From Stylophora pistillata (Eukaryota), in assembly GCF_002571385.2 (NCBI RefSeq), contig NW_019217945.1, positions 419,090-483,089 on the forward strand: a stretch of DNA of 64,000 nucleotides, read 5' to 3'. Under the pieces are notes generated by a model that did not search any database, was not told where the DNA came from, and saw only the letters and a program-made list of their open reading frames with translations. Below, piece by piece: positions 24,201-31,763 of the stretch (its first letter is position 1; the number at the start of each line of letters is the position of its first letter). Both the position numbers and the translations under genes were made by a program.

Positions 24201-27200
24201 TCTGTAATCTTACTTTCTCGTAGGTATGATCCAAACTGCTGTGAAGGTAAATTCTGCCGTACCGCTAGGGTTCTACAAACTAACTCCTTTTCCACTCCCT
24301 ATAGTAAAATTTCGAATTTGAATTCCAGAAAAATTTTGTCTGGAAACAGACACAATTTAAATTAATTAATAAAAATACCTCTGCTCCCACGTTCACTCGC
24401 CTGACCGAACGAGTTAGCAACTCGGACTTTATTTTGATTCTAAGTTGTTTGTTGATAGGATAAGATGTTGTTCTGTGACGAATGTGACCGTGGATACCAC
24501 AGTTTCTGCGTGGGACTCAAACAGATACCTGTGGGTGAGTACATAACCATAGTTATTACCCTAGAATCGTATTGAATCTGGTCGTTAGTAAGGGTGATCA
24601 TTAGTTATATTTTCCTGTTTCTTGCGTTTCTTGTTAATCTTGATAACAATCGGTCTACGTTGTTGTATACACTCATTGCAGTTAGATTAACCTTTTGACT
24701 AAGTCTAAACGCACCGAAACTTAAATTTCACCGCGAAAAGACGTTTAAGGACTTTCTGGAGAGGGGAGGGGAGGGAAGGGGAGATTGGGTAGGGGGAAGA
24801 GGGAGGGGGGAGGGGGGAAGGAGAGGGGGTGAACCCTTGAATGCGACACGCACGATCAAAACTATGAACCGTTTGCCAAGACAACGAAACCTAAAGTGGA
24901 AAACTGAACAATCCCATAGAGAGAACGAACTTAGACTCTTCTACCCCGTTATGCGTTCACTGTGTTGGTTTCTGTCATCAGGTCGGTGGACATGTGACAA
25001 GTGTGGTATGTGTGCATCCTGCTTGAGAAGATCCCCAGGTGAAGGACCAACCTCCAGATGGAAACACGAGGTTTTTATAGCCTCTCCTTACAGTGTTGAG
25101 ACCTTTTATCACAACCAGTACCATGAGTAAAGAGTACTTTGACTTCTATCAGCTAATTTGGTTTCTTATACACTCCACAGTACACCAAACCACGAGACGG
25201 ATCAGAAGTACAGTTCTTACAAACCTTGTGTACTGCTTGTTCCAGGTATAAACCGGTCACAGTATGCTATTTCTTGAACACTTCATGAACACTTCATGCG
25301 ATGCCAACGCATTGTTTATCTACATGTACCCTACACCCGCGCTACACGCATTTTACGCGTGTGGACTTCCTGCAATCACTGCGGACGCTGTTAAAGCGTC
25401 TTTTGCTTCGTCTTGTATCTTTCCTCATATTTAGTTTTTTAAGGGAAAGTTGCTTACATGCTTCATGAATGACTTACAATGTGGTGTCCTCTTTCCAGTC
25501 TTCTCTTTTGTGTTTACTTTGCGCTCTTGTTGATGTTGCGTTTTACATTGTTCCTTTCACAGGTTGAATGACTTACAATGTGGTGTCCTCTTTCCAGTCT
25601 TCTCTTTTGTGTTTACTTTGCGCTCTTGTTGATGTTGCGTTTTGCATTGTTCCTTTCACAGGTTGAATGACTTACAATGTGGTGTCCTCTTTCCAGTCTT
25701 CTCTTTTGTGTTTACTTTGCGCTCTTGTTGATGTTGCGTTTTTGNNNNNNNNNNNNNNNNNNNNNNNNNNNNNNNNNNNNNNNNNNNNNNNNNNNNNNNN
25801 NNNNNNNNNNNNNNNNNNNNNNNNNNNNNNNNNNNNNNNNNNNNNNNNNNNNNNNNNNNNNNNNNNNNNNNNNNNNNNNNNNNNNNNNNNNNNNNNNNNN
25901 NNNNNNNNNNNNNNNNNNNNNNNNNNNNNNNNNNNNNNNNNNNNNNNNNNNNNNNNNNNNNNNNNNNNNNNNNNNNNNNNNNNNNNNNNNNNNNNNNNNN
26001 NNNNNNNNNNNNNNNNNNNNNNNNNNNNNNNNNNNNNNNNNNNNNNNNNNNNNNNNNNNNNNNNNNNNNNNNNNNNNNNNNNNNNNNNNNNNNNNNNNNN
26101 NNNNNNNNNNNNNNNNNNNNNNNNNNNNNNNNNNNNNNNNNNNNNNNNNNNNNNNNNNNNNNNNNNNNNNNNNNNNNNNNNNNNNNNNNNNNNNNNNNNN
26201 NNNNNNNNNNNNNNNNNNNNNNNNNNNNNNNNNNNNNNNNNNNNNNNNNNNNNNNNNNNNNNNNNNNNNNNNNNNNNNNNNNNNNNNNNNNNNNNNNNNN
26301 NNNNNNNNNNNNNNNNNNNNNNNNNNNNNNNNNNNNNNNNNNNNNNNNNNNNNNNNNNNNNNNNNNNNNNNNNNNNNNNNNNNNNNNNNNNNNNNNNNNN
26401 NNNNNNNNNNNNNNNNNNNNNNNNNNNNNNNNNNNNNNNNNNNNNNNNNNNNNNNNNNNNNNNNNNNNNNNNNNNNNNNNNNNNNNNNNNNNNNNNNNNN
26501 NNNNNNNNNNNNNNNNNNNNCATTGTTCCTTTCACAGGTTGAATGACTTACAATGTGGTGTCCTCTTTCCAGTCTTCTCTTTTGTGTTTACTTTGCGCTC
26601 TTGTTGATGTTGCGTTTTACATTGTTCCTCTCACAGGTTGTTCCGAGCCGGTAACTTCTGCCCGGTTTGTTTGAAAGTTTACCGCAATGACGAGTCTGAT
26701 TTGCCTATGGTGTGTTGTGACATGTGTGACCGCTGGATTCACACAGGTTTGACTGAACTACTCTTTTGTCCTTATATAGTTTTGATTTGGAAGACATTAC
26801 AGCGCTGAATCCCAAAACAGAGGTTTGGGTTCGAGTCCTGGCTGGATCGCCGCGTTGTATTCTTAAGCAAAACACTTTACTCTCGTGATGCGTCGCCTCG
26901 GGCTCCCTATGAGTATAGCTGGGTACTGGCAAATGTCTGGGCGGTAACTCAAGGTGGAAGGGGCAGTATTGCTAGTAGTGTGCTTTGAAAACCAAGGTTA
27001 TTTCAGACAGGGTTGGGTATACGTCTTGTGTGGTGATTATTAGTGATATCACTTAAATCATGTGAATAGGTAAAGACTATATATACATGTTTGTGACAAT
27101 TTAGGTGGAAACAGAACCACCTGATCTTAGTTTCTCGTTACGTTGTAAATTAAGGTATTGAATGCACATGTATGTCTATATTTTGATAAATTACTTTAAG

Positions 27201-27586
27201 CTTGTGCTTGACATTTGATTTTCTTTTACTTGGAAGCACGCCTGAAAGGTTTTCCAGATTTACAAAGAATAACTGTATTTAGTTTTGGTTTACAGATATC
27301 TTACTCTGTCGCAACGAAGGTAACTTTAACATTGTATATGCAATGTAACCCCCCTCGAACACCTAGGTGGTTTTTGGGAAAACAATGACAAATATGTTTC
27401 AACAGAAAAACGCAATTGTACGTTAACCTACATAGTTTTTACTTTTCAGATTGTGATGGTATCGACGAAAAAGCTTATGCACAACTCGCCCGGACGAAAA
27501 GCAAGTACAGCTGTGTTCTGTGCCGCGGAGAGAAGCAAGAAAGAATGGATTCCTTTCACAGAAAGAACAGGAGCAAGGCTTCATGA
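18283..27586 (+). CDS. PHF10: PHD finger protein 10 (PHF10/BAF45A/SAYP homolog, PBAF subunit), ~553 aa, with an extra C-terminal PHD finger
   Basis: Exons 18283-18285 (ATG only, tentative), 18389-18677, 19390-19467, 20014-20081, 20395-20460, 20749-20877, 21323-21432, 22073-22205, 22554-22640, 22884-22992, 23494-23606, 24459-24534, 24982-25070, 25181-25245, 26637-26746, 27450-27586. All GT-AG with consistent phases, 1662 nt. SAY-region motifs [50 protein letters not shown] and [18 protein letters not shown]. Double PHD: [33 protein letters not shown]...[11 protein letters not shown]...[26 protein letters not shown]. Confidence 0.93.
19498..19690 (+). mobile_element. Non-autonomous DNA transposon/MITE fragment, family C (PHF10 intron)
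   Basis: Starts ctttaactcccaagatctga... The 3' half (ggtgt..at.aa.ataa...tattctcat...atatta...ggagaagttacatg) recurs at ~29750-29872. Confidence 0.55.
20154..20308 (+). mobile_element. PLE-like family B insertion (5'-truncated) in PHF10 intron
   Basis: Reverse complement of ~5289-5435. Flanked by a 13-bp direct repeat tatgtatacctac (20141-20153 and 20309-20321). The hammerhead core is mutated (ccaaaga). Confidence 0.75.
20905..21075 (-). mobile_element. SINE body fragment (headless)
   Basis: Minus strand atagatgggtactggc...ggggataacc...gatgga...ggggtagtgttact overlaps the 3' part of the SINE at 26797-26975 (atagctgggtactggc...gcggtaact...ggtgga..ggggcagtattgct). Confidence 0.55.
21131..21310 (+). 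repeat. Diverged direct duplication (period ~109 bp) just before the PHF10 exon 7 acceptor
   Basis: tatggaccttgaactc...gtatagatttctttctgatctacagctactgtacaaaatgttt versus tatgaaccttgaactt...gtatggatttctttctgctcttcagttattgtacaaaatgttt. Confidence 0.75.
21754..21977 (+). repeat. 111-bp tandem duplication, 2 near-identical copies (PHF10 intron 7)
   Basis: Unit atgttttatttcaat(a/g)ttccccagaaaggag...tgttgtgcacataca starts at 21754 and again at 21865. Confidence 0.9.
23759..24143. mobile_element. Palindromic (foldback) PLE-like element with a nested family B insertion at 23938-24100
   Basis: Outer arms gatcttgtagtctgatggtctgggcgag / ctcacctagaccattagaccacatgatc are inverted. Inner arms gtgactgacgtttcaacaacctaagcgg / ctgctcaggtggtcgaaacttccgtcac are inverted. 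The insert is flanked by tttgtcatg (23929-23937) and tttgccatg (24101-24109). Confidence 0.65.
24758..24830 (+). repeat. G/A-rich polypurine tract
   Basis: About 70 nt of almost only G and A with many GGG+ runs. Confidence 0.8.
25466..26640 (+). repeat. 99-bp tandem array spanning an assembly gap; each unit ends in the PHF10 exon 15 acceptor
   Basis: Unit tgaatgacttacaatgtgg...cattgttcctttcacaggt starts at 25466, 25565, 25664 and 26540. N gap 25745-26520. About 12 copies if the gap size is right. Confidence 0.9.
26797..26975 (+). mobile_element. tRNA-derived SINE (degenerate)
   Basis: Pol III B-box gggttcgagtcc, then gcgttgtattcttaagcaaaacactttactctc...gagtatagctgggtactggc, a central domain typical of metazoan tRNA-SINEs. 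No cloverleaf. Confidence 0.6.
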
Positions 27587-27892: not shown

Positions 27893-29196
27893 TGACCATA
27901 GTAACGGACTGCTTGACCATCTTCGAAACCCAACCGAAATTGTGGCAGACTTAACGTTAGTCCAAACCACAAGAGAGAAAAGATACAAATGGCAAAACAC
28001 AAGAGATAATCTCTGCATACCCTAACGTGATCTTTCAATCTACAATCATCGTAGAGCAGCATGCCTTGAATTACAGCGGTTACTGGTTTGCATGTAGAGA
28101 GGCCAAAAATGTGATAGAACAGGGGAAGGGTTTAAGGTCGTTTGATGGCATTAGATGCTGCTTGACCTTCTTATGAAAGATAACTTTCATGTCCTAATGC
28201 TATAACTGAAGGTCAGTTATAGCTCTGGACCCAACCGATGTTCGACCAACCCTACTGGACGTCACGGAAAACTTGGATTTTAACCACATCATAATTTAAG
28301 AACGTGTTTATACTTCCAGTAGCATGCACCTACTGTTCTGCAAAATCTTTTTCGAATCCGAACCTTGAGTCCCCCGCCCAGTCCTCCGATAGGAGGAATA
28401 TTTAATATGTAATGAACTGGGTACGAGTTACTTTATAACCCTTGATAATTTCAATGGGGAGCATTGGTCCCGATAAAACCCTGATGGAACGATGTCACAC
28501 GACCTTCCTGGCTAAAATAAGGGAATGCTCCCCCCCGCCTCAAACGTTCTTCGAGACTCATGAAAACCGAATGGATGGTGACTGTGTAGTCCGATAAAAG
28601 AAATCTCAAACAGTTTTTAAGTTTTCCTTTTGTATTGAACTTTAAATGGGACTTTTGATTTCTACAAATGCAACCAGCATCGTAAATTGAATCGAAGAAG
28701 AGCATGACAAACACGAAGCAATAGATAACAAAGATGACTCTAAAATAACAAGGGAAGACTTGTGGCTCTGTTGAGAAACGAGAAAGACCTGGAAACCATC
28801 GCTGACGTTCTATATTTTATGTTGGGGGTCAGCCAACCATTTCTGTTTTTCCGAGACGACCAGTCCAGTCTTCAGTAAGAATAAATGTGTTTAAAACTTC
28901 TAAACGTGATATTTATGCTAGCTAATATACACGGCGTCTAGTGAAAAGCTGTGCGCTTTTAATCGTATCTACAACATTCCGCCAACTATATTTTTATTTT
29001 TTAAAAAAATTGCCTTTGAGAATTCAACCGAATTCCGTTAACGTCGTCCATCCGTACTCCTTGATGCTTCCGTACCCCTTGGATGCCTTCGGCAGTCTTC
29101 GTGAGATACTCGTGAGGTCTCTGTAGTGGATATTCCATTGGAGCTGACGAATCATGTGCATCACTGTTTTGCGAAAATCTAACAGTTGGATGGTCG

Positions 29197-31763
29197 TTAC
29201 ATGTGAGTCGGTGGGTACGCCTGCTCCCCAGGCCTATTCATGTGCATGTAAGGTGATGTTGACATGTACGAACAGTCCGAGTTCGGCCGATAATACGGTG
29301 GGGGTGCCGGCGCAGGGGGAGGATGTGGGGGAGGCATAAACACCGGACCGGAATTGTTTGTCAGCACGGGAGGGGTGGGGTAATTTTGACTGTGTGTCAG
29401 CGGAGTAGATGCTGGCCCATTCCACATGTTATTCATATTTGCGCTGCAGCTGGGAAGCTGATATGGGGAAGGACTTGATTTCTTTTGTTCAAGTTTGGAC
29501 GTCGGAATTGTTCCAGGAGGTGATTTCTTTTCGAGTTTTCTTTTATTTTCCGCGGCTTTGTCCAGTTGCCGACATTTGGCTCTTCTGTTTTTGAACCAAA
29601 CCTTAATCGGTGAAAAAAAATACAATTGAAACGCTTAGTTTAATCACAATGCATACGGAAACAAATTCTAAAATCTTGCTTTGTGTTACCGATTAACCCT
29701 CATATCTGTTTCAAACGTCACCTGGCAACCTGCCGTACCAGTACAGAGAAGGTGGTGTGCCATCAAAATAATACCTCGCAGCCAACAAGCGAGTTTATTC
29801 TCATCCTTTCTCTTTTAGATAATGCACTAATATTATAAGGAGAAGTTACATGTCGATCTCAGGAATGAAAGGAGCACGTCACAGTATGTCCTTAGTTCAT
29901 TCAGCTCAAATGTTTCAAGTTCATCATCTACAATTAATTTCAACCCCCAAGACTGACTGGCGTTCAATTTTTCCTGACAGTATCACCCTTGAACCAAATA
30001 CAAAGGTTATGAGGATGAAGGAAATGATCACATCACTTCATTAAGCTGCCCCTGATTGTCACACAAATTCTTCTGGTCAGTATCCCAGGAAATGTAGAGA
30101 CTAGTGTGGAGAATATCAATTTTGATGTTGGGGCGTGAAGACTTGACCCTTTGTAATTTTAACACAACCTCAACCTTTTTTGGTGTCATCTTCTCTTTTC
30201 ACGTTTCGTCATCCCAGTTAAGTCCTTTCATATTTTTATTCAAGTTATGAAGGGTTCTCTGTCACCTTAAAAATGTCTCTATTTGTCGTGAAGTCCGAAA
30301 TATGCTTTCCCGAAAACTCAGAGAAACGAATAGTACACGATAAACAATATAGAACCAAAATTCATGTGAAGTTTTACGAATTTCAAGGCGGAGAAAGGTT
30401 AATGTTTGTTGATCCCCGACAAGTGATTCCGGCAGGGAGAAGATATCGAGTTACTCGTTCATTGTGTTTGAATGTATTTTCAAATGTATGGCGCATCTCT
30501 CACTGCACCTCAGTTGATGATGCACAAACAAGACAGCTTTATTTTTAGCCGTAATCAACCAATATAAGATATCCTGTTGTGTAACCACAGCAAATTCTTG
30601 CGGTGAATAACTTTTCCCTCCCATGAAGGGTAAAGAAAAAAAAAATTAGCGGAATCGTGTAAGGCTTGTTCGGATGTTACACCTGTTTAACTTCGTACCC
30701 AGGCTGCCAAGGTTGGCACCTGTCAACATGCCTTATCTTTTGCTCTATCACTGATATCCTGATCGCATTTTCTCTGGAAGACGTCTTCGTTCCTTTGTGG
30801 ATTATCCAGACCGGTGATACGGGATTTACCCCACAACCGGGATTAAGGGTTTTAAAAAAATGTTTTTGTCTGGCGAGAAAAAACAATTTCCTAACTGAAT
30901 ATTGTCGCTTCCACCGTCATCCGAAAAGTGCGGTTTGTATCCTCACTCGCTCGCATCAGAAATTCTCCCTTCCAGCTGCCTTAGTTTTCCTCTTAAATTA
31001 GTTCGGAGAAATTGGTAGTGAACCCCAAACTAGTAACCCTCTCTATTCTAGTCATTTGTTCGCCTAATACTGCATATGAATGACTTAACGGATCAGAGGC
31101 AAAACTAGTCCTATGGCAAGAAAAACAGTACCACAAGGAAGAAAAGCTCTTTTGCTTTCACTGGAATGGTCACACACTAGGGTTTCACGCAGAGTCTAAC
31201 CGTTAGTATCCAAGTATCACAATTAACAGCGGTAAATGAAAGAGCTGCTTATTGTTAACATTTGTGGGGCAGAAAGCATCCAGCCCTCACAAAATGATTG
31301 CAACAAAGATTTTCAACTTAAAAGGAACTATAATAACCTTTTTTATGATTCTCCTGTTAGCAACGACAGCTCAGTCGTTTTCGTATGAAAAACATTCCTC
31401 TATCACATCACAACTTTTCAAATCCTCAACCTTCTTCATTCAAGGAAATGAAAAGAAAGACGACATTAAATAGGTTGGGATCAAGTTAGAGAAAACTTGT
31501 GTTTTATAAGGTATTTGTATTACCAAAACATTCAACGAGATTGGTAATGCTGTTATCATCAAATATCTTTCAAGAAATTTTATTGAAAATTAAACCCGTA
31601 TTCGTGACTTGAAATTCCGTGACTGTGAAGGCCAGACAGTTTTTATTACCAAAGTCTTTGTTGAAAGTAATCCTCGCTGTTAGATCACAACTGATAAAAC
31701 AGTACTTGTTTCCTTTAAGCTAATTTAGGCGACTAAGATCGAGTTCCATTCTGTGACATACGC

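What the first reader, a model, noticed from the sequence alone, without database searches (positions are those of the whole stretch)
25466..26746. Tandem array of copied splice acceptors in front of the exon that starts PHF10's third PHD finger
Seen: the 99-bp unit is the end of intron 14 (pyrimidine tract + cacag) plus the first bases of exon 15 (gttg). Roughly a dozen near-identical 3' splice sites therefore precede the real exon, and only the last (ttcctctcacag|gttgttccga) leads into coding sequence. Splicing exon 14 to any upstream copy gives ...[25 protein letters not shown]-stop, which removes exactly the third PHD finger. Inference: a copy-number-variable switch between 3-PHD and 2-PHD (or NMD-targeted) isoforms. 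Alternatively, exon definition skips many perfect decoy acceptors.
Basis: partly seen in the sequence, partly recalled or inferred. Interest (0 to 1): 0.8.

Follow-up and report, generated by a model that had tools for sequence, protein, structure and literature searches.

The report
Silent copied splice acceptors in coral intron
A 99-base tandem repeat at the end of one intron of a coral PHF10-like gene copies the intron's splice acceptor several times, but RNA reads show the cell uses only the copy that touches the exon, so this is a harmless intronic minisatellite and not an isoform switch.

Summary
The 99-bp tandem unit is real. About 2.8 copies lie left of the gap (25466-25744) and 1.2 right of it (26521-26640), 99% alike, and the unit occurs nowhere else in this genome. 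Its last copy carries the true acceptor of the exon starting at 26637. Only three copied acceptors are actually read. "About a dozen" rests on a 776-N gap whose length is not a whole number of units. Depth in an independent DNA run suggests about six units.

The gap lies wholly inside the intron. Spliced RNA reads from two raw-read runs (25 and 18) join 25245 to 26637 across it. No junction to a copied acceptor reached the reporting threshold of 3 reads. There was also no listed exon-15 skipping and no retention signal in the unique part of the intron.

Its alternative, that the decoys are skipped, fits. The closest precedent is the F7 intron-7 minisatellite (PMC1557585), which repeats a donor site, with only the exon-adjacent copy used; this is the acceptor-side mirror image.

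Rare decoy use hidden by NMD or by re-splicing is not excluded, because each unit is bounded by AG|GT.

The parts
24459..24534 (+). Exon holding the second half of the PHF10-type PHD finger ([23 protein letters not shown])
   Evidence: Pfam PHD E=2.5e-6. Joint 24534>24982 has 13 + 31 reads. Loose ends at 24457 carry the end of the previous exon.
24982..25070 (+).
   Evidence: Joints 24534>24982 and 25070>25181; borders read.
25181..25245 (+). Exon 14 ([21 protein letters not shown] + AG of a split codon); its donor is CAG|GTATAA
   Evidence: Joints 25070>25181 (24 + 31 reads) and 25245>26637 (25 + 18 reads).
25246..26636 (+). Intron 14 (GT..AG). Its length of 1391 in this assembly includes the 776-N gap, so the true length is unknown.
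   Evidence: Joint 'skips 1391, GT..AG' in X22 and X23.
25466..25744 (+). Left part of the 99-bp minisatellite: units 1 and 2 complete, unit 3 up to index 79. Unit variants are A/G at unit index 79 and one extra T at the contig end.
   Evidence: TRF, the repeat finder, register analysis. Unique to this locus in the genome.
25538..25562 (+). Pseudo-acceptor 1 (gcgttttacattgttcctttcacag|gttgaa), with a TTTAC branch-point-like motif at -18
   Evidence: pyrimidines 14/18, the same as the real site. No joint listed.
25637..25661 (+). Pseudo-acceptor 2 (G variant, which loses the TTTAC branch-point-like motif)
   Evidence: no joint listed.
25745..26520 (.). Assembly gap of 776 N inside the array and inside the intron.
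   Evidence: 776/99 = 7.84, not a whole number of units.
26521..26640 (+). Right part of the minisatellite: the tail of one unit (index 80-98) plus the last unit, which ends 4 nt inside exon 15 (gttg)
   Evidence: phase 80, 0 mismatches over the first 100 nt.
26521..26537 (+). Pseudo-acceptor 3, 99 nt upstream of the real one; its upstream part lies in the gap
   Evidence: no joint listed.
26612..26636 (+). The real 3' splice site (gcgttttacattgttcctCtcacag|g). It differs from the decoys only by C at 26630.
   Evidence: 43 junction reads end here. X1 DNA contig 3 starts at 26600, the first 31-mer that holds the C.
26637..26746 (+). Exon 15: first half of the third PHD finger ([36 protein letters not shown])
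   Evidence: Pfam PHD E=4.7e-5. Best solved relative is MLL1 PHD3, E=4.8e-8. 33-36 of 36 residues are kept in three relatives' ORFs. Joints on both sides.
26747..27449 (+). Intron 15 (donor CAG|GTTTGA); contains a SINE-like interspersed repeat
   Evidence: Joint 26746>27450: 34 + 22 reads plus an RNA contig.
27450..27586 (+). Last coding exon: second half of PHD3 ([26 protein letters not shown]...), stop at 27584-27586. The 3' UTR runs on past 28400.
   Evidence: RNA depth 17-29 up to 28400, in the direction that fits a + strand RNA.

Best explanation
This is a young minisatellite found only at this locus. It arose by tandem duplication of the last ~95 nt of intron 14 plus the first 2-4 nt of exon 15 of a PHF10-like gene. 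Every unit therefore carries a full copy of the 3' splice site: a branch-point-like TTTAC, a pyrimidine tract and CAG. The spliceosome uses only the copy that abuts the exon body. The upstream copies are silent pseudo-sites, so the array is neutral intronic DNA and every detectable mRNA encodes the 3-PHD protein.

Shown: the array, its uniqueness in the genome, the near-identity of decoys and real site, and exclusive detectable use of 26637.

Inferred: the choice is made by context rather than by the site itself. That context would be exon definition, meaning enhancers in exon 15 and its donor 110 nt downstream, and proximity of the last copy to them. This would be the acceptor-side mirror of the exon-proximal rule shown for the F7 intron-7 donor minisatellite.
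For: The array is 99% alike and unique in the 398-Mb genome. The decoys and the real site are identical over 25 nt except T/C at -7, with equal pyrimidine content of 14/18. Spliced reads for 25245>26637 number 25 (18 start points, X22) and 18 (5 start points, X23). No other joint from 25245 is listed at min_share 2% and 3 or more reads. No exon-15 skipping joint is listed. Depth is 0 in the unique part of the intron (25338-25471). Depth in the array is about 1.1 (about two whole reads) in X22 and 0 in X23. An independent DNA run holds a 129-nt contig (99 + 30, a closed cycle of 31-mers) across a unit-to-unit junction at 602x, against 91-100x in the flanks. The tandem array is therefore real, with about 6 units in that sample. 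Exon 15 and its R|LFRAGNF border are conserved in three relatives, which fits selection for the 3-PHD product. The precedent of silent reiterated splice sites in boundary-spanning minisatellites is PMC1557585.
Against: Only two raw RNA runs of one study were laid, each sampled at about 2%, with tissue and condition unknown. Up to 2 reads per decoy per run would go unlisted. Transcripts spliced to a decoy carry a stop more than 50 nt before the last junction and would be NMD targets, so steady-state reads understate use. The penultimate decoy would define a 209-nt exon, still an ordinary exon size, so exon definition alone does not obviously explain its silence. No experiment here shows what excludes the decoys.
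Confidence: 0.72

Rival explanations
1. The decoys are used at a low or moderate rate, but the products are invisible. Either they are degraded by NMD (unproductive splicing that lowers expression), or they are re-spliced. Re-splicing is possible because each decoy AG is followed directly by GT. After ligation the sequence CAG|GTTGAA forms a donor-like site that could splice on to the next acceptor and restore the normal mRNA.
For: CAG|GTTGAA matches the U1 consensus at 5 of 9 positions, the same as the RNA-verified donor of intron 13 (GAG|GTTTTT). Two of the four verified donors in this gene have T at +3. A verified intron here is only 110 nt, so a 99-nt unit is a plausible mini-intron. A duplicated AGGT segment can be excised as an intron (PMC3265369). 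About two reads lie inside the array in X22.
Against: No decoy junction reached 3 reads in either run, and X23 has zero depth in the array. The two X22 reads add up to two full 150-nt reads inside the array, as expected of unspliced pre-mRNA.
Confidence: 0.17
2. One reading: the array is a copy-number-dependent switch that diverts a substantial, regulated share of transcripts to a 2-PHD protein ending ...[22 protein letters not shown].
For: The decoys are sequence-perfect, and the predicted truncation removes just the third PHD finger. Unit number may differ between samples: about 6 by depth in X1 against about 12 implied by the assembly's gap estimate.
Against: 43 of 43 listed junction reads use 26637. 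The array is not covered as an exon would be. The truncated mRNA would be an NMD substrate rather than a stable isoform. The third PHD exon is conserved in relatives.
Confidence: 0.07
3. Assembly artefact: there is really one unit, and the repeat and gap come from mis-assembly.
For: The gap sits inside the repeat and its length is not a multiple of 99. The contig ends coincide with the variable unit position.
Against: Two complete unit-to-unit junctions are read in the left flank and one in the right. An independent 2024 DNA run has a contig across a unit junction at 6.3 times the flank depth.
Confidence: 0.02

Closest known systems
Human F7 intron-7 37-bp VNTR. The same paper cites similar boundary-spanning minisatellites in IFI6/6-16, CBS, LMNB2 and PDGF (PMC1557585).
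   Same: A minisatellite whose terminal monomer spans an exon-intron boundary by about 4 nt of exon, so the authentic splice site is reiterated (near-)identically in the intron. Only the exon-adjacent copy is used physiologically.
   Different: Those examples reiterate the 5' (donor) site downstream of the exon. This one reiterates the 3' (acceptor) site, with branch point and pyrimidine tract, upstream of the exon. Here the unit is 99 nt and the host is a coral. Polymorphism and latent function of the pseudo-sites are shown for F7 and not here. My library searches found no acceptor-side case, which does not prove that none exists.
Decoy 3' splice sites that regulate splicing: caspase-2 In100 (PMC2082412) and cryptic-exon decoys that promote intron retention in SF3B1 (PMC6097662).
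   Same: Intronic 3' splice-site-like elements that are not productively used.
   Different: Those decoys cause exon skipping or intron retention. Here no exon-15 skipping joint was listed and there was no depth in the unique part of intron 14.
Intron birth by tandem duplication of an AGGT-containing segment (Rogers model; PMC3265369), and recursive splice sites (named from my own knowledge).
   Same: The unit boundary is AG|GT, so each unit has GT...AG ends and its own pyrimidine tract.
   Different: The units already lie in an intron, and no stepwise intermediates were seen. The intron is short, whereas recursive splicing is known from very long introns (own knowledge).
PHF10/BAF45a (PDB 7y8r chain R, 7vdv chain R) and MLL1 PHD3 (2kyu, 3lqh)
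   Same: The exon at 23472-23612 matches the PHF10 PHD region at E=2.7e-15. Exon 15 matches MLL1 PHD3 at E=4.8e-8.
   Different: Human PHF10 ends after two PHD fingers (own knowledge; 498 aa). The coral mRNA continues through exons 13-16 into a third finger, as the junction reads confirm.

Membership tests
Boundary-spanning minisatellite with reiterated splice sites (F7 IVS7 type) | Tandem array whose terminal unit overlaps the exon-intron boundary | tested here: met
   The last unit ends at 26640, 4 nt into the exon that starts at 26637. It is on the acceptor side, not the donor side.
Boundary-spanning minisatellite with reiterated splice sites (F7 IVS7 type) | Pseudo-sites identical in sequence to the authentic site | tested here: met
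   Identical over -25..+4 except T/C at -7. One unit also has G for A at -18.
Boundary-spanning minisatellite with reiterated splice sites (F7 IVS7 type) | Only the exon-adjacent site is used under normal conditions | tested here: met
   25 + 18 junction reads go to 26637 and none is listed to the decoys. This rests on two runs of one study.
Boundary-spanning minisatellite with reiterated splice sites (F7 IVS7 type) | Copy number polymorphic among individuals (VNTR) | tested here: inconclusive
   Depth ratio is 6.3 in X1, against about 12 units implied by an estimated gap and at least 4 demanded by the flanks. No direct count was made.
Boundary-spanning minisatellite with reiterated splice sites (F7 IVS7 type) | Pseudo-sites are functional when the authentic site is disabled | not testable with these tools
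   Needs a minigene or mutant.
Regulatory decoy 3' splice site (In100 type) | The decoy causes skipping of a neighbouring exon or retention of the intron | tested here: not met
   No 25245>27450 joint is listed. Depth is 0 at 25338-25471 in both raw RNA runs.
Alternative 3' splice site coupled to NMD, or an isoform switch | Detectable junctions to the alternative acceptor(s) | tested here: not met
   None reached 3 reads or 2% in X22 or X23. NMD masking was not tested.
Recursive splice site | Juxtaposed 3' and 5' splice-site motifs (Yn-CAG|GT...) | tested here: met
   ttcctttcacag|gttgaa. The donor half matches U1 at 5/9, equal to the verified intron-13 donor.
Recursive splice site | Stepwise intermediates (exon-to-recursive-site junctions, sawtooth depth, lariats) | tested here: not met
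   No such joints are listed. The sampling is shallow and is not nascent RNA.
PHF10/BAF45a gene | Tandem PHD region most similar to PHF10 | tested here: met
   Best solved-structure hits are PHF10 at E=2.7e-15, ahead of DPF3 and KAT6A at about 1e-9. The test was exon by exon only; the N-terminal part was not examined.

The most novel reading that the evidence does not exclude
Because the duplicated segment contains the AG|GT of the intron-exon border, every 99-nt unit is a self-contained mini-intron with a GT start, a branch point, a pyrimidine tract and an AG end. Splicing of exon 14 to any decoy would regenerate a donor (CAG|GTTGAA). That donor could splice on to the next acceptor until the real exon is reached. 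The array would then be a self-correcting 'ratchet' of zero-length exons, which would explain why perfect decoy acceptors can expand next to an essential exon without cost.
Probability: 0.08. Interest if true: 0.6.

Novelty: new variant of a known kind. Interest (0 to 1): 0.3.

Why it matters
As found, this is a natural experiment in 3' splice-site choice. Several essentially identical acceptors, each with its own branch-point-like motif and pyrimidine tract, lie 99 nt apart, and only the exon-adjacent one is detectably used. This argues that in a cnidarian the choice depends on context (the exon body, its downstream donor, proximity). It argues against site strength and against first-come-first-served use of the earliest transcribed site. 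It mirrors the F7 donor minisatellite that was used to argue for directional scanning. The practical consequences are two. The gene should be annotated with the 3-PHD product. The array should not be read as an isoform switch.

Tried and rejected
1. An isoform switch was rejected on the junction reads.

2. An assembly artefact was rejected on the unit junctions that are read and on X1's high-depth cyclic contig.

3. A transposon or dispersed satellite origin was rejected, because the unit matches only this locus in the own genome. The element in intron 15, by contrast, has at least 104 candidate copies.

4. The orthologous intron was pursued through several tools.
- The word search found three relatives' ORFs on long ENA contigs.
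- Only the in-frame translation upstream of the exon could be compared. It is unlike the unit, but those introns are diverged anyway, so this says little about the array's age.

5. Searches of the held paper library for an acceptor-side precedent found none. One search failed on a syntax slip.

6. The last coding exon has no solved-structure match on its own. ARAGORN finds no tRNA in intron 15.

Left out on purpose:
- I did not search any collection for other copies of the array, because that would amount to reading the gap's letters.
Exons were searched one by one.

Full report
**What is in the sequence**

Tandem Repeats Finder reports a 99-bp period at 25466-25742, with 2.8 copies, 99% matches and score 547. 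The same unit resumes right after the N run, at 26521, and continues to 26640. The unit ends ...gcgttttacattgttcctttcacag|gt.

The array runs 4 nt (gttg) into the exon that encodes [36 protein letters not shown]. Copies of the acceptor have their AG ending at 25562, 25661 and 26537. The exon-adjacent copy ends at 26636. Over the 25 nt before the AG it differs from the others only by C for T at 26630. The second unit also has G for A at -18, which removes a TTTAC branch-point-like motif.

Each unit holds a second acceptor-like site (cctctttccag|t; AG ends 25498, 25597, 25696, 26572). Each unit boundary also reads AG|GT. The unit matches nothing else in the 398-Mb assembly. It is therefore a local duplication and not a dispersed element.

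**The gap (tested first, as asked)**

The N run 25745-26520 has 776 letters, which is 7.84 units, so its length is only an estimate. The left flank stops at unit index 79, the variable A/G position, with one extra T. The right flank starts at index 80. The two flanks are thus in the same orientation and in abutting register. A graph assembler breaking at a variant inside a repeat would produce exactly this.

The flanks cannot be overlapped further without mismatches, so there are at least four units, meaning three decoys plus the real site. "Roughly a dozen" is an extrapolation from the estimated gap.

The gap lies wholly inside an intron. Spliced RNA reads (25 in X22, 18 in X23) join 25245 to 26637 across it. 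Order, strand and reading frame (split codon AG|G) of the two exons therefore do not depend on what the gap holds.

**Independent DNA**

X1 is a 2024 run from a different study than the 2016 runs that may be the assembly's source. It covers introns and exons evenly, so it is DNA. In X1 a 129-nt contig lies across a unit-to-unit junction (25526-25654) at depth 602. The flanking single-copy contigs have depth 91 and 100.

The length 129 equals 99 + 30, which is a closed cycle of 31-mers. The tandem array is therefore real in an independent sample. The depth ratio of 6.3 suggests about six units there, as a diploid average and a rough figure. The right flank contig starts at 26600, the first 31-mer containing the C at 26630. 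That base therefore marks the last unit in this sample too.

**RNA**

Two raw-read RNA runs (X22 and X23, about 2% of each read) give clean GT..AG joints:
- 24534>24982
- 25070>25181
- 25245>26637
- 26746>27450

The read direction is the one expected for a + strand RNA in a stranded library. With reporting set at 2% and 3 reads, no joint from 25245 to any decoy is listed, and none to 27450 (exon-15 skipping).

Depth is 0 in the unique part of the intron (25338-25471) in both runs. Within the array it is about 1.1 in X22, which adds up to about 300 bases, or two whole 150-nt reads, as unspliced RNA would give. It is 0 in X23.

In the polyA RNA contigs of X15, the spliced exon 15-to-last-exon contig has depth 172. 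A contig running from exon 15 into intron 15 has depth 6.

Steady-state mRNA therefore carries the 3-PHD reading frame. Any single decoy can account for at most 2 unlisted reads per run.

**The gene**

Exons were searched one at a time; the joined model was not searched.
- The exon at 23472-23612 is closest to PHF10 among solved structures (E=2.7e-15), ahead of DPF3 and KAT6A.
- The next exon scores as PHD in Pfam.
- Exon 15 scores as PHD and is closest to MLL1 PHD3 (E=4.8e-8).
- The last coding exon (27450-27586, stop at 27584) supplies the remaining Cys ligands but has no match on its own.

Three ORFs from long ENA contigs of relatives keep 33-36 of 36 exon-15 residues and the R|LFRAGNF border, so the third finger is conserved. 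Their in-frame translation upstream of the border is unlike the unit.

**Interpretation**

The decoys are not detectably used, however. The preferred reading, a copy-number-dependent isoform switch, is therefore not supported.

The decoys equal the real site in sequence, with pyrimidines 14/18 in each. The choice must then come from context. I infer exon definition and proximity to exon 15 and its donor 110 nt downstream. This step is inferred and not shown.

The penultimate decoy would give a 209-nt exon, so exon size alone does not explain its silence.

Two masked forms of use remain possible.
- NMD: the stop lies well upstream of the last junction.
- Re-splicing: CAG|GTTGAA matches U1 at 5/9, the same as the verified intron-13 donor GAG|GTTTTT. 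Two of the four verified donors here have T at +3, and a verified intron is only 110 nt long. Each unit could thus be removed as a mini-intron, in the sense of PMC3265369.

**Comparison with what is known**

PMC1557585 describes the human F7 intron-7 37-bp VNTR.
- Its first monomer spans the exon-intron border by four exon bases plus 33 intron bases.
- This gives four to eight identical pseudo-donor sites that stay silent.
- The paper lists similar donor-side arrays in IFI6/6-16, CBS, LMNB2 and PDGF.

The coral array is the acceptor-side mirror image. My library searches found no acceptor-side example, which is weak evidence of rarity.

It does not behave like regulatory decoy 3' splice sites (In100, PMC2082412; SF3B1 decoys, PMC6097662). 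Neither exon skipping nor intron retention is seen.

**Verdict**

The feature is real and was mostly well described, but the copy number was overstated and the functional reading is not supported. It is a new variant (acceptor side, in a cnidarian) of a known kind of boundary-spanning minisatellite with silent pseudo-sites. Its interest is modest, mainly as a natural test case for 3' splice-site selection.

Noticed in passing
window 26820-26950 (intron 15): A SINE-like interspersed repeat with a tRNA T-arm-like ggttcgagtcc motif. At least 104 candidate copies (40 scored) occur in the own genome at 70-85% identity. ARAGORN calls no tRNA here. RNA reads over it in X23 all carry three C>T differences, so they come from another allele or from very few molecules.
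   Followed up: partly
window 25071-25180 and 26747-27449: Two of the four RNA-verified donors of this gene have T at +3 (GAG|GTTTTT and CAG|GTTTGA). This suggests a relaxed +3 preference in this coral, and it bears on whether the repeat's AG|GTTGAA could act as a donor.
   Followed up: partly
window 21754-21977: A second young tandem duplication (111-bp unit, 2.0 copies, 97% alike) lies upstream, probably in another intron of the same gene.
   Followed up: no
window 29197-29625, minus strand: An ORF ending in a homeodomain helix-3 motif ([12 protein letters not shown]), followed by a Pro-rich tail. It looks like a homeobox gene convergent with the PHF10-like gene.
   Followed up: no
window 24754-24829 (intron 12): A purine-rich 21-bp low-complexity repeat (GGAGAGGGGGGAGGGGGGAA-like, 3.5 copies). 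The reads tool skipped it as a repeat.
   Followed up: no
window 25019 and 28194-28360: Common variants appear in the RNA reads. C>G at 25019 lies inside exon 13 (9/22 reads in X22, 32/38 in X23, and also in X1 DNA). Several variants lie in the 3' UTR. These are allelic polymorphisms and not editing.
   Followed up: no
window 25440-25470: The X1 DNA contig left of the array stops at 25439, about 55 nt earlier than a 31-mer graph would require if X1 matched the assembly up to the array. The start of the array may differ or be heterozygous in that sample.
   Followed up: no
window 18956-18975: A second, 20-N gap lies upstream in the window.
   Followed up: no
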